Part shown: positions 10,962 to 60,060 of the stretch, one piece after another | Layout: every line of letters begins with the position of its first letter | How positions within the stretch are numbered: the stretch's first letter is position 1 | Origin: Macrostomum lignano | Taxonomy: Eukaryota | Reading direction: 5' to 3' | Assembly: GCA_002269645.1 (NCBI GenBank) | Contig: NIVC01000160.1 | Span: forward strand, 1-64,000 | DNA length: 64,000 nucleotides | Position numbers and translations under genes: made by a program | Notes under the pieces: generated by a model | Databases searched by the model: none | What the model saw: only the letters and a program-made list of their open reading frames with translations | Told to the model about the DNA's origin: nothing

Positions 10962-15512
<4,551 letters not shown>

Positions 15513-21500: not shown

Positions 21501-21825
21501 AGGTGGCTGTCGGCCAATCAGATCTCTAGGAGTGAGGTGGTCGTCGGCCAATCAGATCTCTAGGAGCGAGTTTACTATGAAGGAATGTCATACTTTACCT
21601 CTATCTTCTTCCAGGCTGGTTTCTGAGGTTCAGGAAATTCGCGAAACCGTGGAGCAGCTGCAGGCAAAGCTTCGAGAAGCTGAGAACGCTCTGCAACACC
21701 TGCTGAAGACGAAGTCGGCCCTGGAACACGACCTGTCAGTGAAGAACAACTCGCTGTTTATCGACCGCGAGAAGTGCCTCGGCATTCGCAAGACCTTCCC
21801 GATGGCCCCGCGAGGGTCCTATTGA
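18537..21825 (+). CDS. TEKT3: Tektin-3 (tektin-3/5 class) ciliary microtubule inner protein, 500 aa; exons 18537-18806, 19061-19489, 20192-20262, 20702-20845, 20941-21318, 21615-21825
   Basis: SLPWRPSTYY N-terminal motif, RYTPNDW, FWKTEL, ECLYNREKRQGIDLVHD, tektin signature RPNVELCRD, NNSLFIDREKC. All junctions are GT-AG and in frame. Confidence 0.95.
20335..20660. repeat. Degenerate ~60-bp tandem repeat (CCACTAACCCC..CAGCCTTATCAACGGCCGCCTAAC) in tektin intron 3
   Basis: Four to five imperfect copies visible. Confidence 0.75.
21470..21570. repeat. 34-bp repeat CGGCCAATCAGATCTCTAGGAGTGAGGTGGCTGT x3 in tektin intron 5
   Basis: Direct; related to the arrays at 31860 and 32865. Confidence 0.9.
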
Positions 21826-24935: not shown

Positions 24936-27079
24936 GATCTTCATATGCAGAATTCGGCATATGGACGACGACATATCTGCAGTTATCGATGATGGCACGT
25001 ATGGCCAATTGCTTCTGAAAGTAGCAGTTAAGTATTAAACGTTCGATTGTCCTAAATAGCTGCGGAATTTTAAGTTTAAGTCAAACTACAAGAAATAGCG
25101 TAATATTGTACTCAACTATATCGGGTTTACAGGCGAATATGCGCAGGCCCCAATTGGAATTAAACATTATTATATATATCTATCTTAAAAAATAAAAATT
25201 AAGTATCTTGCAGAAAGCTATGTATAGTGCCATATCTTTTAAAAATAAGTTTAATGTTTTGTTTGACTGTTTATGCAGTAAGTTCGAAATTAAACTTTGT
25301 AAGAATTATTACCCGTTGTTCTTAGAAAGTGCTCTGAAATGTGCGTGTTCCTGACTGCCAGACTCACAGCCCAGGCTTTCTATGCAGCTTCTTGTAGCGT
25401 GGGCCGTAGTTGTGATGCATGAAAATACGGCCATATGAATCATAGAAGACCAAACAGTTGAAACAATATTTGAAGATAACTAACTAAGAGAAAGGGGGGG
25501 GGGTCGGCACCAGACCCCTTGCCCTTGGCAGCCTGGGGGACAGGGCCACTTGGTTCTAGGTATATCAGTAAATTATTCGAAAATTACTATTTTTTATAGG
25601 CTGCTGGTCTGCTGCTAATTCATTAGCCCTTATCATTCACTTGTTTTCCAACTGTTTAACCTATCCATCACCATCATTCCATCATTCCTAAACATAGCTG
25701 AAATTGGTGTTTGCTTTAGAGGTTTGGATTTAGGCTGGACTGGAGGACCAAGGTACATGTAGAATTAAGGCTTATCTGTTGTTGTTTGTTGTTCTCTATT
25801 TTGGATTTTTGCATAATAAATTTTGATTAAAGCCAAAGGTTGTCATATTTAATGTAGGTAAGTAGGTTTATAAATTTATAACACTTTATAAAAGAGGAAT
25901 TTAATCATGCAACTAGGTCTAGGCCATGTCTATATAATATTAATAATTATTTTACATATTTTAGTTAACTAAAATATTTATTAAAATTAGTTAGGCCTAA
26001 TATTATAATAGGCCTATTTGTTACTTGCTTTGTTAGTTATCTTTAAGCTTTTAAATCAAGTTCAAGTTTCTTAGCTCATAGATAAAGCCTAGGGCCTACT
26101 TGAATTTACTAACTAAAGGCAAAGCTAAACAAAATATTACAATATAAAATGTTATATAAATCTTTTGATTTAGATTTGTTAATTTAAACTAGGATAGGAA
26201 AAAGGCTTAAAGAACTGGCTTTACAAATATTAGAAAAAAATAAATTAGTAATATATAAAGTAGGGGGCTATGCCCCCTCCCCAATTGCCTAAGAAAGGAT
26301 AGATATTATTGTTCATTGCACTGGCTTCCAAAAAGGTCTTTCATTGCCATAATTACAAAAAGGTATTTAATTGCTTCTTTCCTAAAATGTTTAGGATATT
26401 CTGGTTCTGCACTATCTATCATATGCCCTCAATAGAAAATCCTGGGTATGCTACTGATTTTTTATTTAATCAAAACAATAAATCAAGACAAGATCTAGAT
26501 ACCTTAAAAATGACTTCTATTTATCTATCAACTAATCTATCAACTAATAATGGCTAACATTACTTAAAATTTTGTATTTGCAGATGGAAAAATATTTTTC
26601 TACTAGGCTAACAATTGTTTGTCTACTATTTAATAGCAAATATATTAGTCATATATTACTTATATCTTTAAAATTTATAGCCTAAAACAGCTAGCATTGT
26701 ACAATATATAGCCTATAAAATTAATAAAAAAATTGTTAAAAATGAGAATTGTTTAAAACAAATCTAGGTATGCACATGCTACTATCTCATGGTACTATAA
26801 CTATCACATAGCACATGGTAGATTGCTGCCACTACTAAGTAGCCCGCCCTCTGTGTAGACTGTTGCCCCTGTCTTCTGAGAAGAGCCCTCTGTTACTGGA
26901 CTGTTACCCCTGTTCTCTAGGCAGCCCTCTGAGTAGACTGTTGCCTCTGCTCTCTAATTAGGCGGCTACATTGTTTTCTAAAACAGAACTGAGTTATTAG
27001 CAAATGGCCGCAGAACAGATGGATAATCTATTTGATTAAGCTGGCACTCCTGTTGCTCCCTGTCTCACCTGCAGCTGTC

Positions 27080-30000
27080 ATGCCTGGCAGAGTACGAGTG
27101 AAAATCCTGTCAGCTCGCAACCTGCCTGTGATGGACAGGGCCAGCTATTCCACTGACGCTTTTGTCGAACTGAAACTCGGCAATGCGTCTTATAAAACAG
27201 AAGTCGCCAGGCGCAGCTTGAATCCGCAGTGGAATACGGAATGGTTTAAGTTTGAGCTGGACGATGAAGAGCTGCAGGATGAGGCCTTGCAGATTCGGGT
27301 CCTGGACTATGACACCTACAGCTCACACGATGCTATTGGGAAGGCAAGTGAGACTTGTGAGAGCCTGGGAGACTGAAGAATGTGCATGCAGTCTTAGCGA
27401 ATAAGGATTTTATGATTAGGAATCTAGAGTTATGGGATCATTAGATAGTGATCTATCCGAACTAACCAAATCCAGAATTAGAGATCTAGAGACACTTGAA
27501 TGCTTAGAATTATACATCTAGTTATATATCTAGAGACAAGTGATTCAATAAGTAAAGATTTGAAGACAAATTGTTCAATTTTTTAAAATCTAGAGACAAA
27601 TGATTCAAGGATTAAAGATTTGAAGACAAATGGTTTAATGATTAGAGATCTAGAGACATGTGGTTCAATGATTAGAGATCTAGAGACATGTGGTTCAATG
27701 ATTAGAGATCTAGAGACATGTGGTTCAATGATTAGAGATCTAGAGACAAGTGATTCAATGATTAGAGATCTAGAGACACGTAATTCAACAATTAGAGATC
27801 TAGAGACACGTGATTCAATGATTAGAGGTCTAGAGATAAGTGATTCAATGGTTAGTGATCTAGATACAGGTGATTCAATGATTAGAGACTATAAGAATTC
27901 CAATGGAACTTTCACCGCCCAGGTGTACATCGACTTGAACCCGTTGCTGGGCAAAGACGGCAGCCGGGGCATGTCGGGCTGGTTCCCCCTATACGACACG
28001 ATGCACGGCATCAGGGGTGACATCCAGATCTCGGTGAACCTGGACCTGTTCAGCGACACCAACAGGTACAGGGAGTCGTCTCTAGGCGTGAAATTCTTCT
28101 ATCACCCGGGCGTACCGGTCGGCCAGACCCTGCTGCAGCTGCTCGGCTTTGTTGAAGAGCTGGTTGTCAACGACGATCCCGAATACCAATGGATAGAGAA
28201 GCTTCGAACTTCCAGGGCGTCTAATGAGGCCAGGTAGGGCCAGTGAGGCACAACTGTTCTCGAGCTGACATAGGTTCGAATCAGGCTTCTCTCAGAATTA
28301 AGCATATGAATTCAATTTTCTCTGCTTTAAAATTATTGTCTCTACATATCGGCAAATGAAATCAAATCCTTTCTTGGGGTTCGATTGATTGTTTCATTCA
28401 TACCTTCATATCTAATTAATAATAATGATGATTGATCACAACTGCCCCAATGGGCAGATGTGCAACCGACAGCTCAGCCGCAGCTACTGCCCGTCCCATC
28501 TAAAGGCTGCATACGACTGTTCAGTCCAAGGACGGGGGGGTCGCCACACATCTTTAATTACCCCAGCTAATGCTGACACTCATTTTACAGCTGGGTGAAC
28601 TGAAGCAATGCAGAGTTAAGTGTCTTTCTCAAAGACACAAATTGTTCCGAGTGGGATCGGTAATCGAACCCCCGACTTTTCAGTCGTAAGTCCGCCGCTC
28701 TAACCACACAACCCCCACTAGGCCACAACCCCCACTAGGCCACAACCCCACTAAGCTACAACTCCCACTAAGCTACAACTCTCACTAGGCTACAACCCCC
28801 ACTAGGCTACAACCCCCACTAGGCCACAACCCCCACTAAGCTACAAGCCCCACTAGGCCACAACCCCCACTAAGCTACAAGCCCCACTAGGCCACAACCC
28901 CCACTAAGCTACAAGCCCCACTAGGCTACAACCCCCACTAGGCCACAACCCCCACTAGGCCACAACCCCCACTAGGCCACAACCCCCACTAAGCTACAAC
29001 TCCCACTAAGCTACAACCTACAACTCTCACTAGGCTACAACCCCCACTAGGCTACAACCCCCACTAAGCTACAACCCCCACTAGGCCACAACCCCCACTA
29101 AGCTACAAGCCCCACTAGGCCACAAACCCCACTAAGCTACAAGCTCCACTAGGCTACAACCCCCACTAGGCCACAACCCCCACTAAGCTACAACTCCCAC
29201 TAAGCTACAACTCTCACTAGGCTACAACCCCCACTAGGCAACAGCTCCCACTAAGCTACAACTCCCACTAAGCTACAACTCTCACTAAGCTACAACTCCC
29301 ACTAAGCTACAACTCTCACTAGGCTACAACCCCCACTAGGCTACAACCCCCACTAGGCAACAGCTCCCACTAAGCTACAACTCCCACTAAGCTACAACTC
29401 TCACTAAGCTACAACTCCCACTAAGCTACAACTCCCACTAAGCTACAACTCCCACTAAGCTACAACCCCCACTAGGCTACAACCCCCACTAGGCTACAAC
29501 CCCCACTAGGCCACAACCCCCACTAAGCTACAAGCCCCACTAGGCCACAACCCCCACTAAGCTACAAGCCCCACTAGGCTACAACCCCCACTAGGCCACA
29601 ACCCCCACTAGGCCACAACCCCCACTAGGCCACAACCCCCACTAAGCTACAACTCCCACTAAGCTACAACCTACAACTCTCACTAGGCTACAACCCCCAC
29701 TAGGCTATAACCCCCACTAAGCTACAACCCCCACTAGGCCACAACCCCCACTAAGCTACAAGCCCCACTAGGCCACAAACCCCACTAAGCTACAAGCTCC
29801 ACTAGGCTACAACCCCCACTAGGCCACAACCCCCACTAAGCTACAACTCCCACTAAGCTACAACTCTCACTAGGCTACAACCCCCACTAGGCTACAACCC
29901 CCACTAAGCTACAACCCCCACTAGGCCACAACCCCCACTAAGCTACAAGCCCCACTAGGCCACAAACCCCACTAAGCTACAAGCTCCACTAGGCCACAAC

Positions 30001-33000
30001 CCCCACTAAGCTACAACTCCCACTAAGCTACAACTCTCACTAGGCTACAACCCCCACTAGGCTACAACCCCCACTAGGCAACAGCTCCCACTAAGCTACA
30101 ACTCCCACTAAGCTACAACTCTCACTAAGCTACAACTCCCACTAAGCTACAACTCTCACTAGGCTACAACCCCCACTAGGCTACAACCCCCACTAGGCAA
30201 CAGCTCCCACTAAGCTACAACTCCCACTAAGCTACAACTCTCACTAAGCTACAACTCCCACTAAGCTACAACTCTCACTAGGCTACAACCCCCACTAGGC
30301 TACAACCCCCACTAGGCTACAACCCCCACTAGGCCACAACCCCCACTAAGCTACAAGCCCCACTAGGCCACAACCCCCACTAAGCTACAAGCCCCACTAG
30401 GCTACAACCCCCACTAGGCCACAACCCCCACTAGGCCACAACCCCCACTAGGCCACAACCCCCACTAAGCTACAACTCCCACTAAGCTACAACCTACAAC
30501 TCTCACTAGGCTACAACCCCCACTAGGCTACAACCCCCACTAAGCTACAACCCCCACTAGGCCACAACCCCCACTAAGCTACAAGCCCCACTAGGCCACA
30601 AACCCCACTAAGCTACAAGCTCCACTAGGCTACAACCCCACTAGGCCACAACCCCCACTAAGCTACAACTCCCACTAAGCTACAACTCTCACTAGGCTAC
30701 AACCCCCACTAGGCTACAACCCCCACTAGGCAACAGCTCCCACTAAGCTACAACTCCCACTAAGCTACAACTCTCACTAAGCTACAACTCCCACTAAGCT
30801 ACAACTCTCACTAGGCTACAACCCCCACTAGGCTACAACCCCACTAGGCAACAGCTCCCACTAAGCTACAACTCCCACTAAGCTACAACTCTCACTAAGC
30901 TACAACTCCCACTAAGCTACAACTCTCACTAGGCTACAACCCCCACTAGGCTACAACCCCCACTAGGCTACAACCCCCACTAGGCCACAACCCCACTAGG
31001 CCACAACGCCCACTAGGCCACAACGCCCACTAAGCTACAAGCTCCACTAGGCTACAACCCCCACTAGGCCACAACCCCCACTAAGCTACAACTCCCACTA
31101 AGCTACAAGCCCCACTAAGCTACAAGCCCCACTAGGCTACACCCCCACTAGGCTACAACCCCCACTAGACTATAACTCCCCAGTAGGCTACAACCCCTCA
31201 CTAGGCTACAACGCCCCCACTAGGCTACAACGCCCCACTAGGCTAAAACCCCCCACTAGGACACAACCCCACTCTAAGATTTCTTAGAAACTTGGCTTAA
31301 AATAGTTTTCTACTCTACATATCGGCAGTCAGTCACAATTTCGCTCTATCCGTGCAGGCAGCGCTTATTCAGCCGTTTAAACGGCCAATTGCAACGCAAG
31401 CTCGGCCTTCGAGTCCTCGGCATGGGCGGCAACGCCGTGATTGGCTACCGGCTGCACTTCGATTTGGAAGGCGAGTCCGGTATTGTTGTCCGCGGCATTG
31501 GCACGGCCGTCAGCCTGACAGCATCGAAATCTGCTGCTCACCTGGCTACGGAGACTTCGCTTACTGTGCAGTCTTCGCTGTCTGTTGCTGCCGCTCCGGC
31601 TGCAGAGCCTGCCGGTGACTCTGCAGCGACTAACGGCACCTTGGAACAGCAGTCCGCAGTTCAGCAGCAACAGTCCGCTGATGTGGCCGACGCTGGCCCC
31701 GGATTTAACAAATTGCTGGTTGTCGCCACTTCTGCCTCGGAATCCGCCAATCTGCGGCCACTGGCGTCTCTGATGACTGCCGGGGCCCCCAGCGCTGCCG
31801 CTGAATGTGTGAGAATGACTTTCATAGCCATGCTGAAATCAGTTTGATTTTTGCTATCTGTGATTGGCTGTTTGGTACCCCAGGACAGTCCTGCGATCTC
31901 TGATTGGCTGTTTGGATAGTCACCCACCTCACTCCGATTCTGCGATCTCTGATTGTCTGTTTGGTTAGTCACCTACCTCACTCCGATTATGCGATCTCTG
32001 ATTACTTGTTTGGATAGTCACCCAACTCACTCCGGTTCTGCGATCTCTGATTGTCTGTTTGGTTAGTCACCCACCTCACTCCGATTTTGCGATCTCTGAT
32101 TACTTGTTTGGATAGTCACCCACCTCACTCCGATTCTGCGATCTCTGATTACTTGTTTGGATAGTCACCCACCTCACTACGGTTCTGCGATCTCTGATTG
32201 GCTGTTTGGATAGTCACCCACCTCACTCCGGTTCTGTGATCTCTGATTGGCTGTTTGGATAGTCACCCGCCTCACTCCGGTTCTGCGATCTCTGATTGGC
32301 TGTTTGGATAGTCACCCACCTCACTCCGGTTCTGTGATCTCTGATTGGCTGTTTGGTTAGTCACCCACCTCACTGCAGTTCTGCGATCTCTGATTGGCTG
32401 TTTGGTTAGTCACCCACCTCACTGCAGTTCTGCGATCTCTGATTGGCTAGGTTTGATATCAATCAAAATTCGCACCATAACTATACTCCACAATTTAGGA
32501 CACACCATTTGTGACTATGTCCTGTCTGCCAACGGGTCTAGTCGCCAGCCTTGGTGGCACAGTGGCCGCCAAATCCGTGAAACTCCTGGTTCACAGCCCG
32601 GATGCACCAGACGCGCGCGACGCCTGGTGGTCTGAGATACGCTCCGAGGTTCGCGCCCACGCGCGCGCTTTTGGCTGCTCGACCGTGATAGGCTATAACG
32701 AGGAGACGTGCATCGCCGATGATCTTATTGTGTTGAGCGCATACGGCACGGCTGCTAAGCTGAACTCTCTAGAAGATGTTCAGAGTGAGTTGCAAAGCTT
32801 TTTTGGATGGCAAGATAGCAGCTGGAGAAACTTAGCCAGCCAATCTGGTGGAAGTGAGGTGGGTAGCCGGCCAATCGGAATGAGAGCGGTTATTAGGAGT
32901 GAGGTGGGTACCCAGCCAATCAGAATGAGAGCTGATAGGAGTAAGGTGATTAGCCAGCCAATCAGAATGAGAGCTGTTAGGAGTGAGGTGGGTAGCCAGC

Positions 33001-36000
33001 CAATCAGGATTAGAGCTGGTAAGGAGTAAGGGGGTTAGCCAGCCAATCAGAATGAGAGCTGGTAGGAGTAAGGTGATTAGCCAGCCAATCAGAATGAGAG
33101 CTGGTAGGAGTGAGGTGAGTAGCCAGCCAATCAGGATTAGAGCTGGTAAGGAGTAAGGGGGTTAGCCAGCCAATCAGAATGAGAGCTGGTAGGAGTGAGG
33201 TGGGTAGCCAGCCAATCAGTATTAAAGCTGGTAGGAGTGAGGTGGGTAGCCAGCCAATCAGGATTAGAGCTGGTAGGAGTGAGGTGGGTAGCCAGCCAAT
33301 CAGTAGGAGAGCTGGTAGGAGTGAGGTGGTTAGCCAGCCAATCAGAATGAGAGCTGGTAGGAGCTGCTATCTTGATTGCTCACCACTTTTTCTTCCAGAT
33401 TCCCAGCAGCCGCCATCGAGCTGTCGCGCTCTGCACGTGCTGTACAGCCAGTCCAGCCCGCCCTTCCCCGTGTCCTTCAGCCGTTGCGCCGTCTGCGGCC
33501 GCGGCAGCGTCCCGGACATCCTGCTGGCCACTTCGGACACTCCGGCCGAACTGGCCACCTGCGGACAACCGGCGCTCATTCAGGCCAGGTGACTGAGCTA
33601 AATGGGATTTAATCTGCAGTGACTGAGCTATTATAAATGGGATTTTTATCCCTAATCTCCCCACAAACAGAGTCTGGCGGCCCAAGCGAGACGCCAAAGG
33701 CGAGGCGAACGCTCGCGAGGTGAGCGACCGGCTGCCCTTCATCGAGTACGAGCTGCACAGCCAGCTGGTGCAGAAGCTGCGCCTGCGCGGCATGAACGGC
33801 CTGTTCGGGCTTCGAACCCGCATGTCGGTGGCCAGCTGCGGCATTCTGGTGACGGCCACCGGCACCGGGGTCCACCTGCTGGCGTTGCCCGCGCCCTGCG
33901 AGCCGCAGCTCGTGTCTAAAGGCGATCAACGGCTGCTGTCCAGTCTGCAGGCCAAGGTGTCCGAGTTTGTGTCCAGGTGGGCAGCTTGTTCGGGTATTTG
34001 ATAAGAAACATTTCGATGCATTTGTGAATAAAAAGTTGCGATTATTTGGTGCCATTTTTCTGTGCGTTTTTGATGCGGCTAGGCTATTTTTGTAGAAATT
34101 ATTAATAGTTATTAATAGTAGTTATAAAAACTTACACAGAACCACAATGTTGAATAAAAACATATGTTACTCGTAGCACTTTTCGAACTACCCTCCAGCT
34201 GCATCGATGCGCTTCCTCTCATCTTCTCAAGCCACGTAAAAAAGCAGCTACCCCACTCCAACTGAGTAGTGTCAAACAGGATGTTGGAGGATGTCTCAAC
34301 AGCGTCTCAACTCTAACTCCCCTGAGCAGACGCTTGGCCCGTAAAGAAGTCGAAGAAGTAAAGATGGACGCGGTTCTGCTTCATGAACTCGATAGTTTTT
34401 TAGCTGTGTGGGCCGGGGCGTTGTCCTGGGGGAGTTGGAGCCCCCCGATGTCGCGTGTTTGGACGTCTCTCTCTCTCAGCCCCAGCTTACAACACCTGGA
34501 GACGTTACACACAGTCACATACCAGTTAGCAGTCACTCAGTCACTGTCTGCTGGGTGACGCTTCTTGACCAGAGAAATTTGAATTCGGGCTGCTTCCTAC
34601 AAGGACCCATTGCGACATTTCATTCGACACGTCATTTCAAACAACCCTCTAGGGACTCTAGCGACATTTAGGCGGTTCTTGTGACTTTCTAAAAACTCAA
34701 ACGACTCACGTACGACGCCCCAGTGTGTGTCCCTTGCGTCACACCAGAGTCTCAGACAATGAAGCACCTTTACAACTCAAGACAATTTTGCGAATTTACT
34801 GGATGAATCTGGGCACCGTTTTCATCGGGTCAAAATTGCACACCCAACTATCGTTTCCACTGATGACCTCCCAGCCCCATGAAAACGTTACCTGGGCCAA
34901 GAAGCGCCCCCCCCCCCTTGGAGTCGTTTCGGAGTCGTTGCAGGTAACACAGGTAAAAACGGAAAGAAGCGACTCTATACGACTCTAAAACGACGAGATG
35001 TCACGGTACAAGTCAATTTGAGGCGTTTTATTGTGTGCGACACTGGGACGTTTCTAGAATGACTATGGGCCGTAGGGTCGTATCTGTGGCTGCTGGAGTC
35101 GCTTTAGAGTCACTTTAGTTGCGTCTGAAGAGCACCTGCGTTACCTTATGAATTGTAATAGCATTTCGCATTTAGTATATGAACTCGATTTAGTCAACTT
35201 AATTGAAGCGCTTCTTAGACTAGGCTGTTTCGGGACTCTTTTTCCAACTCTACAACTCAACAATCGCCTCTCCGTCGCATGCAGTCGTTTGAGTCTTGTC
35301 ACGGTAAATATTTTCAACAATTGATTGCAAACCGCCCCGTAACCTCATTTATCCAGGAGTCGCGAGGTGCACGGCCTTGATCGGGCCCAAGCGCTCGCAG
35401 CCATCTCAGCCTCATCAGGCGCATCAGTTTCCAACGCATCAGCCAGTAACAGCGACTCGGGAGGGGCGGCTGAGGATGCTGAGGCTTCCCCGCCCATCGA
35501 TCTGCAGTCAAATCAGCGAGACAACTTCATCATCTCCTTGGCTGACGACTGCGAAACTGACGAGATGGAAGCCTTGTTGGTTGACTATCCTCTGATGGAC
35601 AGTCTGCAGCTCACCTGCTCCCCTGCCTGCCGCTCTGAGGACACCAACTTCTTTGTGAGGATTCTGCGATGCCCGCTGGACGATCCCGAGGCTAACAGTA
35701 GCAGACAGGTGAGGTTGGGCGTCTCCGGGTTATGATTTTTGAGCTCCGGGTTATGATTTCTGAGCTCCGGGTTATGATTTCTGAGTTCCGGGTTATGATT
35801 TCTGAGTTCCGGGTTATGATTTTTGAGCTCCGGGTTATGATTTTTGAGCTCCGGGTTATGATTTCTGAGTTCCGGGTTATGATTTCTGAGTTCCGGGTTA
35901 TGATTTCTGAGTTCCGGGTTATGATTTCTGACTTCCGGGTTAGGATTTCTGAGTCCCGGGTTATGATTTCTGACTTCCGGGTTAGGATTTCTGAGCTCCG

Positions 36001-37018
36001 GGTTTTTTATTTTTTAGTTCCGAGTTATGATTTCTGAGTTCCGGGTTATAATTTTCGAGTTCCGGGTTATAATTTTCGAGTTCCGGGTTATGATTTCTGA
36101 GTTGCGTGTTATGATTTTTGAGTTCCCGGTTATGATTTCTGAGTCCTGGGTTATTATTTCGCATTATGGTTAAATATGTGAGCTGCTTTGGTATGATCTC
36201 ATAAATTCAGGTTATGATCTCATAAATTCAGGTTATGATCTCATAAATTCAGGTTATGATCTCATAAATTCAGGTTATGATCTCATAAATTCAGGTTATG
36301 ATCTCATAAATTCAGGTTATGATCTCATAAATTCAGGTTATGATCTCATAAATTCAGGTTATGATCTCATAAATTCAGGTTATGATCTCATAAATTCAGG
36401 TTATGATCTCATAAATTCAGGTTATGATCTCATAAATTCAGGTTATGATCTGAATTCTAATTGACCTCAGAATCCTAGCAAAATCAAGTTCAACAACTTC
36501 CCCCTCCCACTCCCCAGGTGAACTCCCTCCTAGCGGACATGCTGCACTCCACCTGTTTCCACTTCCGGCACAGCCTGCCCTGCACTCTGGCAGCTCTGCA
36601 CTTCCACACGGAGGTCACGGACGAGAGCTGCCTGCAGACGGTGCTGACAGGCGACTGCGTCAGGCAGACCGCGCCTCAGGGCGGCCTGTTGCTGGGCACA
36701 GCCAGTGGGGTGCTGCTGTGCTCCGGCTGCCATCCGCCGGGCCGGTCCGTGGCCAACTACCTGGGCAATTTGGACTTTTTCTTCATCCGCGAGACCAGCT
36801 CCGTGAGAGACTGCGGCGGCTCGCAGGCCTTCCTGCACACCTGTCTAGCCGAGGTGATGGCCGTGGTTCGAGCCCACGCCGCCGCTTTGGGCGGCCAAGC
36901 CGTGACCTCGTTTCACCTGAGCGAAGTGCTGCTGCTGGATAACCCGAGCAGAGGACACGCCCAGTGCCTGCTGAACGTGTGCGGTGATGTGGTCCAGCTG
37001 CCGGTGGCTGAGGCCTGA
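27080..37018 (+). CDS. C2CD5: C2 domain-containing protein 5 (C2CD5/CDP138), 886 aa; exons 27080-27343, 27923-28233, 31358-31808, 32499-32784, 33399-33588, 33671-33976, 35357-35708, 36518-37018
   Basis: MPGRVRVKILSARNLPVMDRAS..DAFVE..SLNPQWNTEWFKFE..DAIGK|VYIDLNPLL..GWFPLYDTMHGIRG..GFVEELVVNDDPEYQW..RASNEARQRL..GGNAVIGY..FDLEGESGIVVRGIGTA..RDAWWSEIR..LPFIEYELHSQL..VRAHAAALGGQAV..AQCLLNVCGD, colinear with vertebrate C2CD5 as recalled. Phases are consistent and intron 1 is GC-AG. Confidence 0.95.
27470..27890. repeat. 30-bp minisatellite TGGTTCAATGATTAGAGATCTAGAGACATG in C2CD5 intron 1
   Basis: Direct periodicity; source of the MIRDLETCGS ORF prefix. Confidence 0.92.
28414..28707 (-). mobile_element. 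tRNA-derived CORE-like SINE, copy 2, with (ATC/ATT)n 3' tail
   Basis: Its reverse complement aligns along its length with 14894-15170; simple-repeat tail at 28414-28433. Confidence 0.85.
28708..31273 (-). repeat. 17-bp minisatellite GGGGGTTGTAGCCTAGT (~150 copies) equal to the SINE 5' head/A-box
   Basis: The + strand unit is ACTAGGCTACAACCCCC; it is contiguous with the SINE copy 2 head and identical to the head of copy 1. Confidence 0.95.
31860..32450. repeat. ~49-bp minisatellite TGATTGGCTGTTTGGATAGTCACCCACCTCACTCCGGTTCTGCGATCTC in C2CD5 intron 3
   Basis: Direct periodicity. Confidence 0.93.
32865..33365. repeat. 42-bp minisatellite AGCCAGCCAATCAGAATGAGAGCTGGTAGGAGTGAGGTGGGT in C2CD5 intron 4
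   Basis: Direct periodicity; partial reverse complement of the 31860 array. Confidence 0.93.
35722..36160. repeat. 21-bp minisatellite CCGGGTTATGATTTCTGAGTT
   Basis: Direct. Confidence 0.94.
36190..36450. repeat. 21-bp near-perfect minisatellite ATAAATTCAGGTTATGATCTC
   Basis: Direct. Confidence 0.96.
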
Positions 37019-39164: not shown

Positions 39165-40075
39165 ATAGACTATGCCTCCCCAAGAATCGCCCTATGCCTC
39201 CCCAAGAATCGCCCTATGCCTCCCCAAGAATCGCCCTATGCCTCCCCAAGAATCGCCCTATGCCTCCCCAAGAATCGCCCTATGCCTCCCAAAGAATCGC
39301 CCCTATGCCTCCCAAGAATCGCCCCTATGCCTCCCCAAGAATCGCCCCTATGCCTCCCCAAGAATCGCCCCTATGCCTCCCAAGAATCGCCCCTATGCCT
39401 CCCAAGAATCGCCCCTATGCCTCCCAAGAATCGCTCCTATGCCTCCCCAAGAATCGCTCCTATGCCTCCCCAAGAATCGCTCCTATGCCTCCCCAAGAAT
39501 CGCCCCTATGCCTCCGTAAGAATCGCCCCTATGCCTCCCCAAGAATCGCCCCTATGCCTCCCCAAGAATCGCCCCTATGCCTCCCAAGAATCGCCCCTAT
39601 GCCTCCCCAAGAATCGCTCCTATGCCTCCCCAAGAATCGCCCTATGCCTCCCCAAGAATCGCCCCTAAGCCTCCCCAAGAATCGCCCCTAAGCCTCCCCA
39701 ATAATCGCCCCTATGCCTCCCCAAGAATCGCCCTATGCCTCCCCAAGAATCGCCCCTATGCCTCCCCAAGAATCGCCCCTATGCCTCCCCAAGAATCGCC
39801 CCTATGCCTCCCCAAGAATCGCCCCTATGCCTCCCCAAGAATCGCCCTATGCCTCCCCAAGAATCGCCCTATGCTTCCCCAAGAATCGCCCCTAAGCCTC
39901 CCCAATAATCGCCCCTATGCCTCCCCAAGAATCGCCCTATGCCTCCCCAAGAATCGCCCCTATGCCTCCCCAAGAATCGCCCCTATGCCTCCCCAAGAAT
40001 CGCCCCTATGCCTCCCCAAGAATCGCCCTATGCCTCCCCAAGAATCGCCCTATGCTTCCCCAAGAATCGCCCTGA
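39165..40075. repeat. 21-23-bp minisatellite ATGCCTCCCCAAGAATCGCCCCT
   Basis: Direct; source of the MPPQESP / LCLPKNRP ORFs. Confidence 0.96.
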
Positions 40076-40223: not shown

Positions 40224-43200
40224 ATGCCCTGCTTTCACTGCAACGGGTTCTACAGCGCGTGCGATGACCAGCCGGTGTGCCCCGTGTGCCACTCCTTCCT
40301 CTATCAGTACCAGTGCACCGCCCTGAAGCGCGACGACGAAGACGGAGACTCCGGCACCGAGGAGGAAGCCGCTGCTCACGCTGCTGCCGCCGCCGTCGGC
40401 CCGTCGGGTGCCGCTTCTGACGATGAGGCCCAGCAGCTGCGGCAGTTGCGACAGCAGCAGCAGAAAAAGTTGTTGCAGCAACAGCTGCGGCAGCAGCAGC
40501 AACAGCAGCCTCTGCCATCTAGCAGTGTAAATGCGAGAGCCAGTGACCTGGAGCTTCAGAGTTTGAGTTCCGGAGTGACTTTTGGGGCTTCAGTGTTTGA
40601 GTTCCGGAGTGACTTTTGGAGCTTCAGTGTTTGAGTTCCGGAGTGAATTTTGGAGCTTCAGAGTTTGAGTTCCGGAGTGACTTGGAGCTTCAATGTTTGA
40701 GTTCCGGAGTGACTTTTGGAGCTTCAGTGTTTGAGTTCCGGAGTGACTTGGAGCTTCAATGTTTGAGTTCCGGAGTGACTTTTGGAGCTTCAGTGTTTGA
40801 GTTCCGGAGTGACTTGGAGCTTCAGTGTTTGAGTTCCGGAGTGACTTTTGGAGCTTCAGTCTTTGAGTTCCGGAGTGACTTTTGGAGCTTCAATGTTTGA
40901 GTTCCAGAGTGACTTGGAGCTTCAATGTTTGAGTTCCAGAGTGACTTGGAGCTTCAATGTTTGAGTTCCAGAGTGACTTGGAGCTTAAATGTTTGAGTTC
41001 CAGAGTGACTTGGAGCTTCAATGTTTGAGTACTATCTCAGAGCACCATCGCACCCCCTCCGCAGAGCTCAGCGCAGTCGCGCGGTGCCCGCCTTGACGCC
41101 CTGCCAACCGAGCTGATTCTGGCCGTGTTGGCTCACTGCGACGACATGGCGGTCTGGTCGCTGCTCCGCCTTGGCAACCGGCGGCTGACCCAGATTATCG
41201 AACGGGAGTTCTCCGACGCCTACTGGCAGCGGCAGCTCAGCCACCGGTGGCCCCTGTTCACCCTGCGCCGGCCCCTGGGCGCCGGCACCTGGCGCTCTCT
41301 CTACTCGGATCTGCTGCTGAGCGCGCCCTGTCTCGCCTGTCTCGCCAGCGGGCCCTCCAGTTGGGACGTCGACGAAGCGTCGTCGTGGCGACAGCGCCGG
41401 CTGAGGCTGGAGTACCGCAGCCTTATACAGGAGCCGCCCTACGGCGTGGCGGCCGTGCCGACGCCCGTGGACAGCGGCCGGCTGTCCCAGTGGCATGCCG
41501 TCATCTGCGGCCCGCCCGGCTCCCCCTATCAGGGCGGAGCCTTCTTCCTGTCTCTGACTGTGCCGCACAGCTACCCGCTGCGACCGCCGTTGATTCGCTT
41601 CCTGACTAAGGTGGGCGAGGGGGTGAACTGTGTTTGCGTTTTACCCGCCTTGAAATCGTTTCTAAAACCATCGGGAAATCGCCCCAAATTTCATGAGAAT
41701 CGTCCCTAAACAGTTTTATACAAGGTAAATTAGTTAACCACCTAAAAATCACACAATCACACTAACCCACCCCAAGAATCAACCCTAGGAATCAACCCAA
41801 TAATCGCTCCTAAGCCCCAAAAATCGCCCCTAAACCACCCCAAGAATCGCCCCTAAACTACCCCAAGAATTACCCCTAAACTACCCCAAAAACTGCCCCT
41901 AAACCACCCCAAGAATCGCCCCTAAACTACCACAACAGTCGCCCCTAAACTACCTTAGGAATCGCCCCTTAACTACCACAACAATCACCCCTAAACTACC
42001 ACAACAATCGCCCCTAAACTACCCTAAGAATCGCCCCTAAACTATCCCTAGAATCGCCCCTAAACTACCTTAGGAATCGCCCCTTAACTACCACAACAAT
42101 CACCCCTAAACTACCCTAAGAATCGCACCTAAACTATCCTAAGAATCGCCCCTAAACTACCCTAAGAATCGCACCTAAACTACCCTAAAAATCGCCCCTA
42201 AACTACCTTAGGAATCGCCCCTAAACTACCCCAAAAATCGCCCCCAAACTATCCCTAGAATCGCCCCTAAACTACCTTTGGAATCGCACCTAAACTACCC
42301 CAAGAATCGCACCTAAACTATCCTAAGAATCGCCCCTAAACTACCCCAAGAATTGCCCCTAAACTACCACAACAATCGCCCCTAAACTACCACAACAATC
42401 GCCCCTAAACTACCACAACAATCGCCCCTAAACTACCCACAGAATCGTCCCTAAATCACCCACAGAATCGCCCCTAAATTATCCCAAGAATCGCCCCTAA
42501 ACCACCCCAAGAATCGCCCCTAAACCACCCCAAGAATCGCCCCTAAACTACCACAACAATCACCCCTAAACTACCACAACAATGGCCCCTAAACTACCAC
42601 AACAATCGCCCCTTAACTACCACAACAATGGCCCCTAAACTACCACAACAATCGCCCCTAAACTACCACAACAATCGCCCCTAAACTACCTTAAAAATCA
42701 CCCCTAAACTATCCCTAGAATCGCCCCTAAACTACCTTAGGAATCGCACCTAAACTACCCCAAGAATCGCACCTAAACTATCCTACGAATCGCCCCTAAA
42801 CTACCCCAAGAATCGCCCCTAAACTACCACAACAATCGCCCCTAAACTACCACAACAATCGCCCCTAAACTACCACAACAATCGCCCCTAAACTACCCAC
42901 AGAATCGTCCCTAAATCACCTACAGAATCGCCCCTAAACTACCACAACAATCGCCCCTAAACCACCCCAAGAATCGCCCCTAAACCACCCCAAGAATCGC
43001 CCCTAAACTACCACAACAATCGCCCCTAAACCACCCCAAGAATCGCCCCTAAACTACCACAACAATCGCCCCTAAACTTTATCCTTAAATCCTTTAATCG
43101 ACAGTGAACCCTGCGTAAACTAGTCAAATACCCCGAATTAACTGCCACCCCAGGTGTTCCACCCCAACGTGAGTCGTCACGGAGACGTGGGCCTGGACGC

Positions 43201-43447
43201 CATCTTGCCAACCAACTGGAGCCTGGCCCTCACCCTGGCCAAAGTGCTGGTCTGTGTTCAGAGCCTACTCACGGACCCCTACACCGAGGTGAGCATGGAG
43301 CCCAGGATCGCCCGGCTGTGCATCGAAAACCGGCCAGAATTCGAGCGGCTGGCCCGCCTGTGGACCTGGAAGTACGCCATGCACGACTTTGTCGGGCCTT
43401 TGGCTGCGACCGACGAACCGGCGGGTGACGGCGGTGGTGACTTGTAA
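40224..43447 (+). CDS. morgue: Morgue-like ubiquitination protein (zinc finger + F-box + E2 variant lacking the catalytic Cys), 380 aa; exons 40224-40526, 41065-41610, 43154-43447
   Basis: N-terminal CFHC-x12-CPVC; F-box LDALPTELILAVL; UBC fold RRLRLEYRSL..WHAVICGPPGSPYQGGAFFL..YPLRPPLIRFLTK|VFHPNVSRHGDVGLD..WSLALTLAKVL..SLLTDP..WTWKYAM, with Gly at the catalytic Cys position. Phase-0 junctions AGT|GTAAAT..CGCAG| and AAG|GTGGGC..CCCAG|. Confidence 0.9.
40540..41030. repeat. 32-34-bp minisatellite GAGTTCCGGAGTGACTTTTGGAGCTTCAGTGTTT in morgue intron 1
   Basis: Direct. Confidence 0.94.
41770..43075. repeat. 23-bp minisatellite CCCTAAACTACCCCAAGAATCGC in morgue intron 2
   Basis: Direct; shares CCCCAAGAATCGCCCCTA with the 39165 array. 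Confidence 0.95.
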
Positions 43448-43611
43448 TTTGTTGGCGTTTTCGTTTAATCTTCTCTTCAAGCATTTCCGCCTTGCACTCG
43501 TCAGCCCCGTTTAGCACTCGCTGTTTTTGTTTATGGTTACTGCGTGTGTGAAATATTTTCTCACCTTGCAATCGTCACTGCAGTTTTTGGCCTTCTTATT
43601 TTAATTTCACC

Positions 43612-44480
43612 CGCCCTAATTAGCCTCACGCCCACCTGGACTAATTAGCCTCACGCCCACCTGCAATAATTAGCCTCACACTCACCTGCAATAATTAGCC
43701 TCACACCCACCTGCACTAATTAGCCTCACACCCACCTGCCCATATTAGCCTCACGCCCACCTGGACTAATTAGCCTCACGCCCACCTGCAATAATTAGCC
43801 TCACACTCACCTGCAATAATTAGCTTCATATCCACCTGTCCTATTTAGCCTCACACCCACCTGCACTAATTAGCCTCACGCCCACCTGCACTAATTAGCC
43901 TCACACTCACCTGCAATAATTAGCTTCATATCCACCTGTCCTATTTAGCCTCACACCCACCTGCACTACGAGCTAATTAGCCTCACACCCACCTGCAATA
44001 ATTAGCTTCATATCCACCTGTCCTATTTAGCCTCACACCCACCTGCACGAATTAGCCTCACACCCACCTGCACTAATTAGCCTCACACCCACCTGCACTA
44101 ATTAGCTTCATATCCACCTGTCCTATTTAGCCTCACACCCACCTGTACTAATTAGCCTCACACCCACCTGCACTAATTAGCCTCACACCCACCTGCACTA
44201 ATTAGCCTCACACCCACCTGCACTAATTAGCCTCACACCAACATGCCCTAATTAGCCTCACACCAACATGCCCTAATTAGCCTCACACCAACATGCCCTA
44301 ATTAGCCTCACACCAACATGCCCTAATTAGCCTCACACCAACATGCACTAATTAGCATCACACCAACATGCCCTAATTAGCATCACACCAACATGCCCTA
44401 ATTAGCATCACACCCACCTGCACTAATTAGCCTCACACCCACCTGGACTAATTAGCCTCACACCAACATGCCCTAATTAG
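43612..44480. repeat. 25-bp minisatellite TAATTAGCCTCACACCCACCTGCAC
   Basis: Direct. Confidence 0.94.
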
Positions 44481-45239
44481 TCTCAAACACGCCACCCCTC
44501 GTTGGCGCCGTCAAACAGTTGTTTAGTTTTGTAAGTTGTACAATTTTACTGTTATAATCTGTTATATTTATTTAAGTATTCTGATTCAAACCCATAGTGC
44601 ATTTGTCTCCGTACTGTTGCTTACGTCATAGTTGCTTTGCTAACTATTACAAGGTGTAGTGCAAGTGCGCTATGCCTTTCTTTGTTAAATCGTGAAGTGT
44701 GCGGTAACTTATCCACATTTATGTATGATATAATCAGTTAGTTATGTGTAATAGTTTTAGATGCAGCAACAAAAAAACTTTTAATAGAATCGATGGTAGA
44801 TGTCATATATCCTGTTTAAAAAATACATAAAGCCCAACTTCTCCGTTTGCACTTTCATAATGGGGATTATCTATCCATAGAGCTATTTAAATAATATAAA
44901 TTCTGCTCAGTCAATCCTTCACAAAATTTGTTCAGTAAAATTCAGCAGATTTCAGCAGTTTTTTCTCTTTTTTGTCGCTTAAATTCTTGCATTTCTACTC
45001 ACAGTAGCCCAGAACTGTGAGGAGGCCTGGCCATGTGCTTTGCACTGCTTGGTATAACAATTTCAGCAATAGAGAAATTCTGCTGTTCCATGCATTGCTA
45101 TAAGTATTTAAAAGTACAGAACTACAGTACTCGTTTCTAGGAATTAGTATCCGAAATTGGCCCAGAGGCGCTTTTACCTTTCATAGGATCGAAGATTTAA
45201 CATACTCGAAGACAGTAAATCTCATAGCTCAAAACTTCG

Positions 45240-59261: not shown

Positions 59262-60060
59262 GTAAAAGCGGCCTTTCTAACTCTGATTCAGTGATACTTT
59301 TTCCGGATTTTGAACCCTTCCGCTACTTTAAAAATAGATCTTACATCCGCGCAAGGGTCAATTGCTACCGCAAACGCAATAGTTATTGCCAGGGGGAACT
59401 TGTATCCCCAACCCTAAAGAGCGTGTGCACCTTCACAGGAAATGTACGCAGAACCAAAGCCATGCAAGCTATAGGGGAAGATTCCACAGTAGGTGTTTTC
59501 TTCCCCAGGTTGCAGAAGACCCGACCTGCTTCCCCCCTAAACCCGCTGAAGCTGCTGTCCCCATCTGCTATTCGGGATGCTGCATTGAAAGTCAGCCAGC
59601 CTTGTTGCTAGGGGGGGGGGCGGTTCTCTGCGCATCTGCGCGCACGTTTGGCAAAAGAGAAAAAAATATTGCCTGGTACAGCGAAGGAATCCTGCGGGTT
59701 AGGCTGGGTTATAAATGGAACCGAGGGGAAGAGCGGGGAGAGGTCCATAGCCTGCCTTGACCTTGGCTTCTTCAGCAGCCCCGCATTATTGAAGCCAGTC
59801 TTCCAGTCCCGGCTTCATCATTAGCGTGGCCGCTTTATTGACTTGGTCTGGCGAGTTCTGCATTGACTGAGTCACTGGCTATGGCACAATTGGGCAGATT
59901 TCTTATATATTAGAACAAAGACTTTGAACGGAAGCTCGGCCATACAGTGTAGAATTTCTGGCGGAAGCTTCAATTATGAAGCGGTTCCGAAAGCGACTGA
60001 CGGCTTCCCTTCGAGCGTTTGATGCCGCACTGACTTTAACTCCTCACTCAACTCGCGCAG

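What the first reader, a model, noticed from the sequence alone, without database searches (positions are those of the whole stretch)
40224..43447. Morgue-type zinc finger/F-box/inactive E2 fusion in a probable flatworm
Seen: C-x2-C-x12-C-x2-C at the N-terminus, an F-box (LDALPTELILAVL), and a UBC domain whose HPN motif is followed by VSRHGDVGLD, with Gly where active E2s have Cys (ICLD). Established: this architecture and the Cys->Gly change define Drosophila Morgue, an IAP-antagonising pro-apoptotic ubiquitination factor with a patchy invertebrate distribution. Inference: if the host is a platyhelminth, this extends Morgue's range. The Reaper/Grim-type partners known from flies are not expected there, so its role (for example SCF-linked turnover in regeneration or apoptosis) is open. 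Automated annotation would likely mislabel it as an active UBE2D.
Basis: partly seen in the sequence, partly recalled or inferred. Interest (0 to 1): 0.72.

Follow-up and report, generated by a model that had tools for sequence, protein, structure and literature searches.

The report
Flatworm Morgue gene, already annotated
This is a real three-exon gene of the flatworm Macrostomum lignano encoding the orthologue of Drosophila Morgue (zinc finger, F-box, catalytically dead E2 domain), but the gene is already in GenBank and Morgue is already known from flatworms, so it is an ordinary, merely mislabelled, family member.

Summary
Window 40224-43447 (+) carries three phase-0 exons with canonical GT..AG introns. 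They encode a 380-aa protein with C-x2-C-x12-C-x2-C, an F-box-like segment and a UBC fold. In that fold HPN is followed by VSRHGDVGLD, with Gly296 (GGC, 43190-43192) aligned to UBE2D2 Cys85.

The window is Macrostomum lignano contig NIVC01000160.1, positions 1-64000. My model is residue-for-residue identical to the deposited CDS PAA66448.1/PAA89204.1 ("hypothetical protein"; UniProt "E2 ubiquitin-conjugating enzyme"). That annotation was built from RNA-seq.

It is a Morgue orthologue: 40-44% identity over about 96% of its length to proteins with the same architecture, some named morgue. All 121 aligned sequences have the Gly.

The claim that this extends Morgue's range is not supported. The literature already lists Platyzoa, and databases hold orthologues from at least seven trematode and cestode genera.

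One mild peculiarity is that the M. lignano F-box is the most eroded one sampled: no Pfam F-box hit, and Trp to Leu at a conserved position. Whether it still binds Skp1 is open.

Low interest: a new member of a known kind.

The parts
40224..40526 (+). Exon 1 (codons 1-101): start codon, C4 zinc finger, acidic DSGTEE motif, Ala/Gln-rich linker
   Evidence: ORF and GT donor at 40527. Identical to the first 101 residues of deposited PAA66448.1/PAA89204.1.
40230..40289 (+). Zinc finger C3-x2-C6-x12-C19-x2-C22
   Evidence: The four Cys are conserved in 115-118 of 121 aligned homologues. The motif is described as essentially invariant in Morgue (PMC3787007). AF2 pLDDT is about 80.
40347..40364 (+). 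DSGTEE acidic motif (residues 42-47)
   Evidence: D, S, G and the final E are conserved in 117-118 of 121 homologues.
40527..41064 (+). Intron 1 (538 bp), largely a 32/66-bp tandem array (40542-41030)
   Evidence: GT..AG boundaries and TRF array. It is 609 bp in the second copy, which has one extra C in the polypyrimidine tract.
41065..41610 (+). Exon 2 (codons 102-283): F-box-like segment, Trp-rich helices with conserved CxxC, N-terminal half of the UEV domain
   Evidence: The exon 2/3 junction restores the family-invariant RFLTK|VFHPN without any indel.
41092..41226 (+). F-box-like segment (residues 111-155, LDALPTELILAVL...)
   Evidence: It aligns to the F-box of orthologues that do hit Pfam F-box. 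It scores 33.3 bits on a Morgue F-box HMM. AF2 predicts helices with pLDDT above 90. It has no Pfam hit of its own.
41227..41361 (+). Trp-rich linker helices and invariant SxPCxxC (C190, C193)
   Evidence: W155, R162, P164, W177, S187, C190 and C193 are invariant or nearly so.
41398..41610 (+). UEV (inactive UBC) domain, first part (residues 213-283)
   Evidence: Pfam UQ_con at 1.5e-35 over residues 213-353. Foldseek TM 0.94 and rmsd 1.7 A to UbcH5.
41611..43153 (+). Intron 2 (1543 bp), mostly a 23-bp tandem array (41815-43078)
   Evidence: GT..AG boundaries and TRF array. It is 1083 bp in the second copy.
43154..43447 (+). Exon 3 (codons 284-380 plus TAA): HPN motif, Gly296, C-terminal helices of the UEV domain
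   Evidence: It is 100% identical at the DNA level in the second copy.
43190..43192 (+). GGC codon for Gly296, at the position of the catalytic Cys of active E2s
   Evidence: It aligns to the Cys of UbcH5B ICLD. Gly is present in 121 of 121 homologues. The same GGC is in the second contig.

Best explanation
The locus is the Macrostomum lignano orthologue of Drosophila Morgue. It is a transcribed three-exon gene encoding a 380-aa protein with three modules: an N-terminal C4 zinc finger, a diverged F-box followed by Trp-rich helices, and a C-terminal UBE2D-like domain. In that domain the thioester-forming Cys is replaced by Gly, making it a ubiquitin E2 variant (UEV). What is shown: the protein has no Cys at the catalytic position, so it cannot carry ubiquitin as a thioester there. 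What is inferred from the Drosophila protein: it acts as a non-catalytic ubiquitin-system adaptor that binds Lys48-linked polyubiquitin through the UEV and N-terminal regions. If its F-box still works, it also docks on Skp1 in an SCF-type complex and so influences proteasomal turnover of partners such as IAP-type proteins.
For: - Gene structure and motifs.
- The model is identical to deposited M. lignano proteins PAA66448.1/PAA89204.1, and the window is identical to NIVC01000160.1.
- The GenBank annotation of that assembly was derived from RNA-seq and transcriptome assemblies (PMC5730564).
- The best non-self hits (E 1e-87 to 1e-71, 40-44% identity over about 96% of the length) all have the ZF, F-box, UEV order. 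They include insect proteins named 'morgue' or 'modifier of rpr and grim' and trematode proteins named 'morgue'.
- The Gly, HPN, the four zinc-finger Cys and DSGxEE are conserved across 121 sequences.
- The UEV domain is 53-64% identical to other Morgue UEVs versus 43% to UBE2D2. It shares Morgue-specific substitutions at UBE2D2 positions C85G, P95L, N114Y and D117V.
- The predicted fold superposes on UbcH5 (TM 0.94).
- Functional properties of fly Morgue (SkpA binding, K48 polyubiquitin binding by both the N- and C-terminal halves, association with DIAP1) come from PMC3787007.
- IAPs are described in flatworms (titles of PMC6078320 and PMC7188921).
Against: - Nothing functional was tested. 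Even in Drosophila the biochemical role is unsettled, and substitutions of the Gly did not change over-expression phenotypes (PMC3787007).
- The M. lignano F-box is the most diverged one sampled. It has no Pfam F-box hit and only 30% identity to the family consensus. It scores 33 bits on a Morgue F-box HMM, against 42-62 for parasitic flatworms and at least 76 for the other taxa, which were scored in-sample. The conserved Trp of the '(K/R)RW' position is Leu.
- Structural matches of the F-box segment to F-box proteins are statistically weak (E 0.1-10).
- Transcript support is indirect, resting on how the deposited annotation was made. I did not see reads.
Confidence: 0.85

Rival explanations
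1. The protein is still a Morgue orthologue, but its F-box has decayed and no longer binds Skp1. In M. lignano, and perhaps in flatworms generally, it would then act only as a stand-alone zinc-finger/UEV polyubiquitin-binding protein, independent of SCF.
For: - No Pfam F-box, F-box-like or F-box_4 hit at E<=10 for the isolated segment, whereas the trematode, cestode and snail segments do hit.
- It has the lowest score and lowest consensus identity of all sequences compared.
- Substitutions W142L, F123L, L126C and C138G, plus a 1-residue insertion.
- Several other flatworm orthologues also lack a precomputed Pfam F-box hit.
- In flies the F-box was dispensable for the over-expression phenotypes (PMC3787007).
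Against: - The L-P-x-E core and the following hydrophobic positions are kept (LPTELILAVL).
- The segment is confidently predicted as the helical bundle seen in the family (pLDDT above 90).
- The best structural neighbours, though weak, are Skp1-bound F-box proteins (Fbw7, FBXW8, Fbs2).
- Four of the five conserved Trp remain.
Confidence: 0.2
2. It is an active UBE2D-type E2, and the Gly codon is a sequencing or assembly error.
For: The UBC domain is closest to UBE2D2 among solved structures (E about 1e-35), and UniProt names it an E2 enzyme.
Against: - GGC is present in two independently assembled contigs.
- Gly is invariant in 121 of 121 homologues.
- Other Morgue-specific substitutions accompany it.
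- The N-terminal ZF and F-box modules are absent from UBE2D.
Confidence: 0.01
3. The three-exon model is a chimera or a decaying duplicate. Either exon 1 belongs to another transcript, or the locus is a pseudogene copy in the redundant DV1 genome.
For: - An older M. lignano model (A0A1I8GCS3, 293 aa) lacks exon 1 and starts inside intron 1.
- The DV1 assembly is highly redundant (PMC5730564).
- The intron positions are not shared with Paragonimus or Capitella.
Against: - Exon 1 carries two Morgue-specific conserved motifs (zinc finger, DSGxEE), on the same strand and 538 bp upstream.
- All exons are phase 0, with canonical splice sites.
- In Paragonimus, residues 9-420, covering ZF to UEV, are encoded by one continuous exon.
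- The truncated model is explained by one extra C in the intron of the other copy.
- Both copies have intact ORFs, and their only two coding differences are synonymous.
- The deposited transcript-based CDS equals the model.
Confidence: 0.03

Closest known systems
Drosophila Morgue (modifier of rpr and grim, ubiquitously expressed) and its invertebrate orthologues
   Same: It has the same three modules in the same order: CX2CX12CX2C zinc finger, F-box followed by Trp-rich helices, and a UEV domain with Gly at the catalytic Cys position. It also has the signature HPN(V/I)SRHGD(V/I)G(L/I)D and the DSGxEE motif (PMC3787007).
   Different: - It is shorter than the fly protein (380 aa; Gly296 versus Gly421 in fly).
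- The zinc finger starts at residue 3.
- The linker is Ala/Gln-rich.
- The F-box is the most diverged one sampled, with Leu at one of the five conserved Trp and no Pfam hit.
- It has single-residue insertions after G138 and after I300, found only in M. lignano.
- It has Cys317 where 119 of 121 sequences have Ser.
Parasitic-flatworm Morgue orthologues (Paragonimus, Calicophoron, Opisthorchis, Dicrocoelium, Schistosoma, Taenia, Sparganum)
   Same: They belong to the same phylum and have the same architecture, at 37-42% identity over about 95% of the length. They have also lost the Trp of the '(K/R)RW' F-box position, where they carry Cys.
   Different: - M. lignano does not group with them in a UEV-only neighbour-joining tree, though it sits on a long branch and the placement is not resolved.
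- The Paragonimus gene is essentially one coding exon, whereas M. lignano has two repeat-filled introns.
- The neodermatan F-boxes still reach Pfam thresholds when scanned alone.
UBE2D (UbcH5) family of active E2 enzymes
   Same: It has the UBC fold (TM 0.94, rmsd 1.7 A), 43% identity, and the HPN motif and Asp87 equivalent are kept.
   Different: - The catalytic Cys85 is Gly.
- The E3-contact and active-site-rim positions differ in the Morgue-specific way (F62L, P95L, N114Y, D117V).
[quoted passage not shown]

Membership tests
Morgue | N-terminal C4 zinc finger with CX2CX12CX2C spacing | tested here: met
   C3, C6, C19 and C22. The columns are conserved in 115-118 of 121 homologues. The definition comes from PMC3787007.
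Morgue | Central F-box, homologous to that of other Morgue proteins and at the same position | tested here: met
   It aligns column-for-column with orthologue F-boxes, with P115 and E117 invariant. It scores 33.3 bits on a 49-column HMM built from non-flatworm Morgue F-boxes. Helices are predicted with pLDDT above 90.
Morgue | F-box recognisable as a generic F-box (Pfam PF00646/PF12937) | tested here: not met
   There is no F-box family hit for the whole protein at E<=1 or for the isolated segment at E<=10. Three orthologue segments scanned in the same call hit at 7e-11 to 2e-5. Foldseek matches to F-box proteins are weak (E 0.1-10).
Morgue | Five conserved Trp in and after the F-box ('typically', per PMC3787007) | tested here: not met
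   Four of the five are present (W132, W155, W163, W177). Position 142 is Leu where 115 of 121 sequences have Trp. Other flatworms have Cys there.
Morgue | C-terminal UBC-fold domain with Gly replacing the active-site Cys | tested here: met
   Pfam UQ_con at 1.5e-35. Gly296 lies opposite the catalytic Cys of UbcH5B. Gly is present in 121 of 121 homologues.
Morgue | Best database relatives are Morgue-architecture proteins rather than stand-alone E2s | tested here: met
   The top 120 hits all cover about 66-98% of the length with ZF, F-box and UEV, at E 1e-87 to 1e-71. The UEV domain is 53-64% identical to Morgue UEVs versus 43% to UBE2D2. A multi-subfamily E2 phylogeny was not made.
Morgue | Binds Skp1 via the F-box, binds K48 polyubiquitin, associates with an IAP | not testable with these tools
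   These are known only for the Drosophila protein (PMC3787007).
Active E2 (UBE2D-type) | Catalytic Cys in the HPN...C(L/I)D context | tested here: not met
   GGC (Gly) at 43190-43192 in this contig and in the second copy.

The most novel reading that the evidence does not exclude
In Macrostomum lignano, an early-branching free-living flatworm, the Morgue F-box has eroded past the point of Skp1 binding. Morgue's conserved core function would then be SCF-independent polyubiquitin recognition by the zinc finger and the Gly-UEV domain. M. lignano has RNAi and transgenesis, which would make it a convenient system to find that core function outside the fly Reaper/Grim context.
Probability: 0.2. Interest if true: 0.35.

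Novelty: new member of a known kind. Interest (0 to 1): 0.15.

Why it matters
It matters little beyond annotation hygiene. The gene is already deposited, though only as a "hypothetical protein" and as an "E2 ubiquitin-conjugating enzyme". Morgue is already reported from Platyzoa and is present in many parasitic flatworms.

Three modest points follow:
- The M. lignano entries, and many orthologues labelled E2 D3, UBC9 or UBE2O, should be renamed as catalytically inactive Morgue-type UEV proteins.
- UniProt A0A1I8GCS3 is a truncated model that starts inside an intron.
- M. lignano is experimentally tractable, so it could be used to ask what Morgue does in an animal where the fly partners are not expected, and whether the eroded F-box still engages Skp1.

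Tried and rejected
- Zhou et al. 2009 (Mol Biol Evol 26:2245), the primary paper on Morgue distribution, is not held. I relied on its citation in PMC3787007 and on database hits.
- A literature search for Morgue plus Macrostomum, and for the gene ids Mlig033795 and Mlig002393, found nothing. A broad flatworm/Morgue search was uninformative.
- Intron-position conservation cannot be used as support for the gene model. Paragonimus encodes residues 9-420 in one exon, and the Capitella introns lie elsewhere. This neither supports nor contradicts the model.
- A UEV-only neighbour-joining tree rooted on UBE2D2 placed M. lignano on a long branch outside the neodermatan clade. No support value was returned for that node. 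I draw no conclusion on within-Morgue placement.
- The selection test between the two genomic copies has no power. There are only 2 synonymous and 0 non-synonymous differences, and the noncoding flanks are about equally similar.
- Foldseek of the isolated F-box segment returned F-box/WD40 proteins only at non-significant E-values.
- The source organism of the closest-looking unnamed relative, P0132 (Logan runs ERR14224706 and ERR14224704), could not be determined.
Full report
**What is in the sequence.**
Window 40224-43447 (+) holds three coding segments joined by canonical introns:
- Exon 1 is 40224-40526 (ATG ... AGT|GTAAAT).
- Exon 2 is 41065-41610 (CCGCAG|AGC ... AAG|GTGGGC).
- Exon 3 is 43154-43447 (CCCCAG|GTG ... 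TAA).

Each exon is a multiple of three, giving a 1143-nt CDS and a 380-aa product. An in-frame stop lies 18 nt upstream of the ATG. The CDS is 66% G+C in a 46% G+C window.

Both introns are mostly tandem repeats. Intron 1 carries a 32/66-bp unit at 40542-41030. Intron 2 carries a 23-bp unit at 41815-43078.

The protein starts MPCFHCNGFYSACDDQPVCPVCH, which is C3-x2-C6-x12-C19-x2-C22. It has LDALPTELILAVL at residues 111-123. It has HPNVSRHGDVGLD at residues 286-298, with Gly296 encoded by GGC at 43190-43192.

**Where the window comes from, and whether the gene is known.**
The best database hit is a 293-aa Macrostomum lignano UniProt entry at 99% identity. Its 90% cluster also contains a 380-aa protein, P0144. 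This is GenBank PAA66448.1 and PAA89204.1, "hypothetical protein BOX15_Mlig033795g1 / Mlig002393g1". In UniProt it is A0A267EY49, "E2 ubiquitin-conjugating enzyme".

P0144 is identical to my model. The locus fetched for it, NIVC01000160.1 positions 30224-53447, is base-for-base identical to window 30224-53447. So the window is M. lignano Mlig_3_7 contig NIVC01000160.1, positions 1-64000. The annotated gene span equals the finding's coordinates.

Wudarski et al. 2017 state that the GenBank annotation of this assembly was derived from a genome-guided transcriptome. They built it from RNA-seq with StringTie/TACO plus the de novo assembly MLRNA150904 (PMC5730564). The deposited three-exon CDS is therefore transcript-based. 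This is indirect but real evidence that the exons are co-transcribed.

**A second copy.**
Contig NIVC01001557.1 (locus L006) carries a syntenic duplicate, with the same C2CD5-like gene upstream, encoding the identical protein. The coding DNA differs at two synonymous sites (40382 T>C, 41538 A>C). Exon 3 is identical and the Gly codon is again GGC.

The introns differ in length because of repeat copy number: 609 versus 538 bp for intron 1, and 1083 versus 1543 bp for intron 2. This copy has one extra C in the polypyrimidine tract just before exon 2. That extra base puts the intron tail in frame with exon 2. This explains why the older UniProt model A0A1I8GCS3 begins "FEYYLRAPSHPPPQSS..." inside the intron and lacks the zinc finger.

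The DV1 line is known to carry extra large chromosomes and about 180 Mb of duplicated sequence (PMC5730564), so a near-identical second copy is expected.

**What it is.**
Outside M. lignano, the 120 best hits (E 1e-87 to 1e-71) are 350-640-aa proteins matching 66-98% of the query. Their precomputed Pfam domains are F-box plus UQ_con. They come from molluscs, annelids, nemerteans, arthropods, flatworms and one hemichordate. Several insect entries are named "morgue" or "modifier of rpr and grim, ubiquitously expressed".

In a 121-sequence alignment:
- The four zinc-finger Cys are present in 115-118 sequences.
- The DSGxEE motif is present in 117-118 sequences.
- HPN, S290, H292, G293 and D298 are present in all 121.
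- Gly at the catalytic position is present in all 121.

PMC3787007 defines Morgue by exactly these features. It names an essentially invariant CX2CX12CX2C finger, an F-box with typically five conserved Trp, and a UEV domain with Gly for the active-site Cys, "no other UEV" having that Gly.

Among solved structures the UBC domain is closest to UBE2D2/D3 (E about 1e-35). The printed alignment puts Gly296 opposite the Cys of ICLD. The domain is 43% identical to UBE2D2 but 53-64% identical to other Morgue UEVs. It shares the Morgue-specific replacements at UBE2D2 positions C85G, P95L, N114Y and D117V, with L or M at F62.

An AlphaFold2 model of the full protein has mean pLDDT 80.8 and pTM 0.69. It shows an ordered finger, a disordered acidic/Ala segment (residues 36-64), a long Gln-rich helix (67-94), a confident helical F-box region and a canonical UBC fold. 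That fold superposes on UbcH5 with TM 0.94 and rmsd 1.7 A. The protein is a Morgue orthologue, not an active E2.

**The range claim.**
PMC3787007, citing Zhou et al. 2009, says Morgue is conserved in "Lophotrochozoa, Platyzoa, and Ecdysozoa". I could not read the 2009 paper. My recollection that its abstract names Platyhelminthes is unverified.

Independently, a profile search seeded with flatworm sequences returned full-length orthologues from seven named genera. Paragonimus heterotremus and Calicophoron daubneyi are both labelled "morgue". The others are Opisthorchis felineus, Dicrocoelium dendriticum, Schistosoma spindalis (a 31-member cluster), Taenia crassiceps and Sparganum proliferum. 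Several unnamed transcript-like contigs also came back.

So a platyhelminth Morgue is not a range extension. No paper in the searchable library mentions Morgue together with Macrostomum. At most, then, this is an undescribed member in a free-living, early-branching flatworm.

**What is slightly unusual.**
The F-box is real by homology but eroded. Pfam reports only UQ_con for the whole protein. It reports nothing for the isolated residues 106-200, even at E<=10. In the same call the equivalent segments of Paragonimus, Sparganum and Littorina hit F-box models at 7e-11 to 2e-5.

| Group | Score on an HMM of non-flatworm Morgue F-boxes | Identity to the family F-box consensus |
|---|---|---|
| M. 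lignano | 33.3 bits | 30% |
| 15 neodermatan sequences | 42-62 bits | 36-45% |
| Other taxa | at least 76 bits (in-sample) | mean 69% |

Specific changes are F123L, L126C, C138G, a one-residue insertion (N139) and W142L. The last removes one of the five conserved Trp; other flatworms have Cys there.

The L-P-x-E core is retained, however. AlphaFold2 predicts the segment as a confident helical bundle (pLDDT 91.5). Its best PDB neighbours, though not significant (E 0.1-10), include Skp1-bound Fbw7, FBXW8 and Fbs2. Whether Skp1 binding survives is therefore open.

Other M. lignano-only features are a one-residue insertion after I300 and Cys317 in place of a near-invariant Ser.

**How it most likely works.**
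One thing is shown: there is no thiol at the catalytic position, so the protein cannot form an E2~ubiquitin thioester there.

The rest is inferred from Drosophila (PMC3787007). Fly Morgue co-purifies with SkpA and with Lys48-linked ubiquitin multimers. Both its N-terminal (ZF plus F-box) and C-terminal (UEV) halves bind K48 chains. It associates with DIAP1 in vitro and may lower DIAP1 levels. The authors themselves say the precise biochemical role is unsettled, and that replacing the Gly with Cys, Ala or Ser did not change over-expression phenotypes.

My best reading is that the M. lignano protein is a non-catalytic polyubiquitin-binding adaptor that may dock on Skp1. IAP-type proteins are plausible clients, since IAPs are described in flatworms (titles of PMC6078320 and PMC7188921). 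I rate identity as a Morgue orthologue at above 0.95. The adaptor mechanism rates about 0.5, and loss of the SCF link about 0.2.

**Rivals.**
- A sequencing error hiding an active E2 is excluded. The second contig carries GGC and the Gly is invariant across the family.
- A chimeric or pseudogene model is unlikely, for these reasons:
  - Exon 1 carries two Morgue-specific motifs.
  - In Paragonimus the finger-to-UEV span is one exon.
  - Both M. lignano copies are intact, with only synonymous differences.
  - The deposited transcript-derived CDS equals the model.

**Verdict.**
The identity call is right and the mislabelling prediction is right. The novelty claim is wrong. This is a new, previously unnamed member of a known kind, and the interest is low.

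Noticed in passing
window 1-64000: The window is Macrostomum lignano assembly Mlig_3_7 (GCA_002269645.1), contig NIVC01000160.1, positions 1-64000. Locus L005, fetched from that record at 30224-53447, is identical to the same window coordinates.
   Followed up: yes
L006 10001-12835 (NIVC01001557.1, reversed): This is a syntenic second copy of the gene encoding an identical 380-aa protein. It has 2 synonymous differences and the same GGC codon. Its introns differ in length through tandem-repeat copy number (609 vs 538 bp; 1083 vs 1543 bp), and the same C2CD5-like gene lies upstream. This is consistent with the duplicated large chromosome of the DV1 line.
   Followed up: yes
window 41030-41064 / L006 10879-10912: UniProt A0A1I8GCS3 (293 aa) is a truncated model that starts inside intron 1. 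The other copy has one extra C in the polypyrimidine tract (C6 vs C5), which puts the intron tail in frame with exon 2.
   Followed up: yes
window 39170-40072, 41815-43078, 43608-44485: The gene is embedded in satellite arrays. The 23-bp unit upstream (CTATGCCTCCCCAAGAATCGCCC) and the 23-bp unit filling intron 2 (CCCCAAGAATCGCCCCTAAACTA) share the core CCCCAAGAATCGCCC. A 25-bp array starts 160 bp after the stop codon.
   Followed up: partly
window 1-64000: By my sum of the non-overlapping TRF rows, about 21.5 kb (roughly a third) of the window lies in about 27 tandem arrays with TRF score of at least 200.
   Followed up: partly
window 2667-5014 (-), 11860-12100 (+), 19013-21822 (+), 26993-37015 (+), 59928-60395 (+): Pfam on ORF fragments identifies the neighbouring genes. 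They are an M13 (neprilysin-type) peptidase, a Ras-family GTPase exon, a tektin, a C2CD5-like protein (C2 plus YbjQ-like domains; 887 aa in the deposited annotation), and a calponin-homology-domain exon.
   Followed up: partly
P0072 (Glandiceps talaboti, LOC144437407, 28-Mb contig): A hemichordate, that is a deuterostome, encodes a full-length Morgue-architecture protein with zinc finger, F-box and Gly-UEV, 40% identical to the M. lignano protein. Morgue is usually described as a protostome protein.
   Followed up: no
window 41329-41340 (C190-x2-C193) and 43178-43180 (H292): Besides the N-terminal C4 finger, all aligned Morgue proteins keep an invariant S-x-P-C-x2-C just before the UEV domain. 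They also keep an invariant His (SRHGD) four residues before the Gly; UBE2D2 has NSNGS at the position of SRHGD.
   Followed up: no
L003 (Paragonimus, 6199-7434) and L004 (Capitella): Morgue intron positions are not conserved. Paragonimus encodes residues 9-420 in one exon. Capitella has introns at other positions (for example after MMLQ and inside IPN|NYP). The two M. lignano introns, in the linker and at FLTK|VFHPN, were seen in neither.
   Followed up: partly
P0132 / L001 270-1553 (Logan ERR14224706): This is an unnamed 427-aa Morgue relative encoded without introns on a 5.9-kb contig. Like M. lignano, its zinc finger starts at residue 3 (MTCRFCNGFY...) and it has no Pfam F-box hit. The organism is unknown.
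   Followed up: partly
hit tables: Morgue orthologues are widely misnamed as active enzymes in public databases, all despite the Gly at the catalytic position. Examples are 'Ubiquitin-conjugating enzyme E2 D3', 'E2-17 kDa', 'E2 5A', 'SUMO-conjugating enzyme UBC9' and '(E3-independent) E2 UBE2O'.
   Followed up: no
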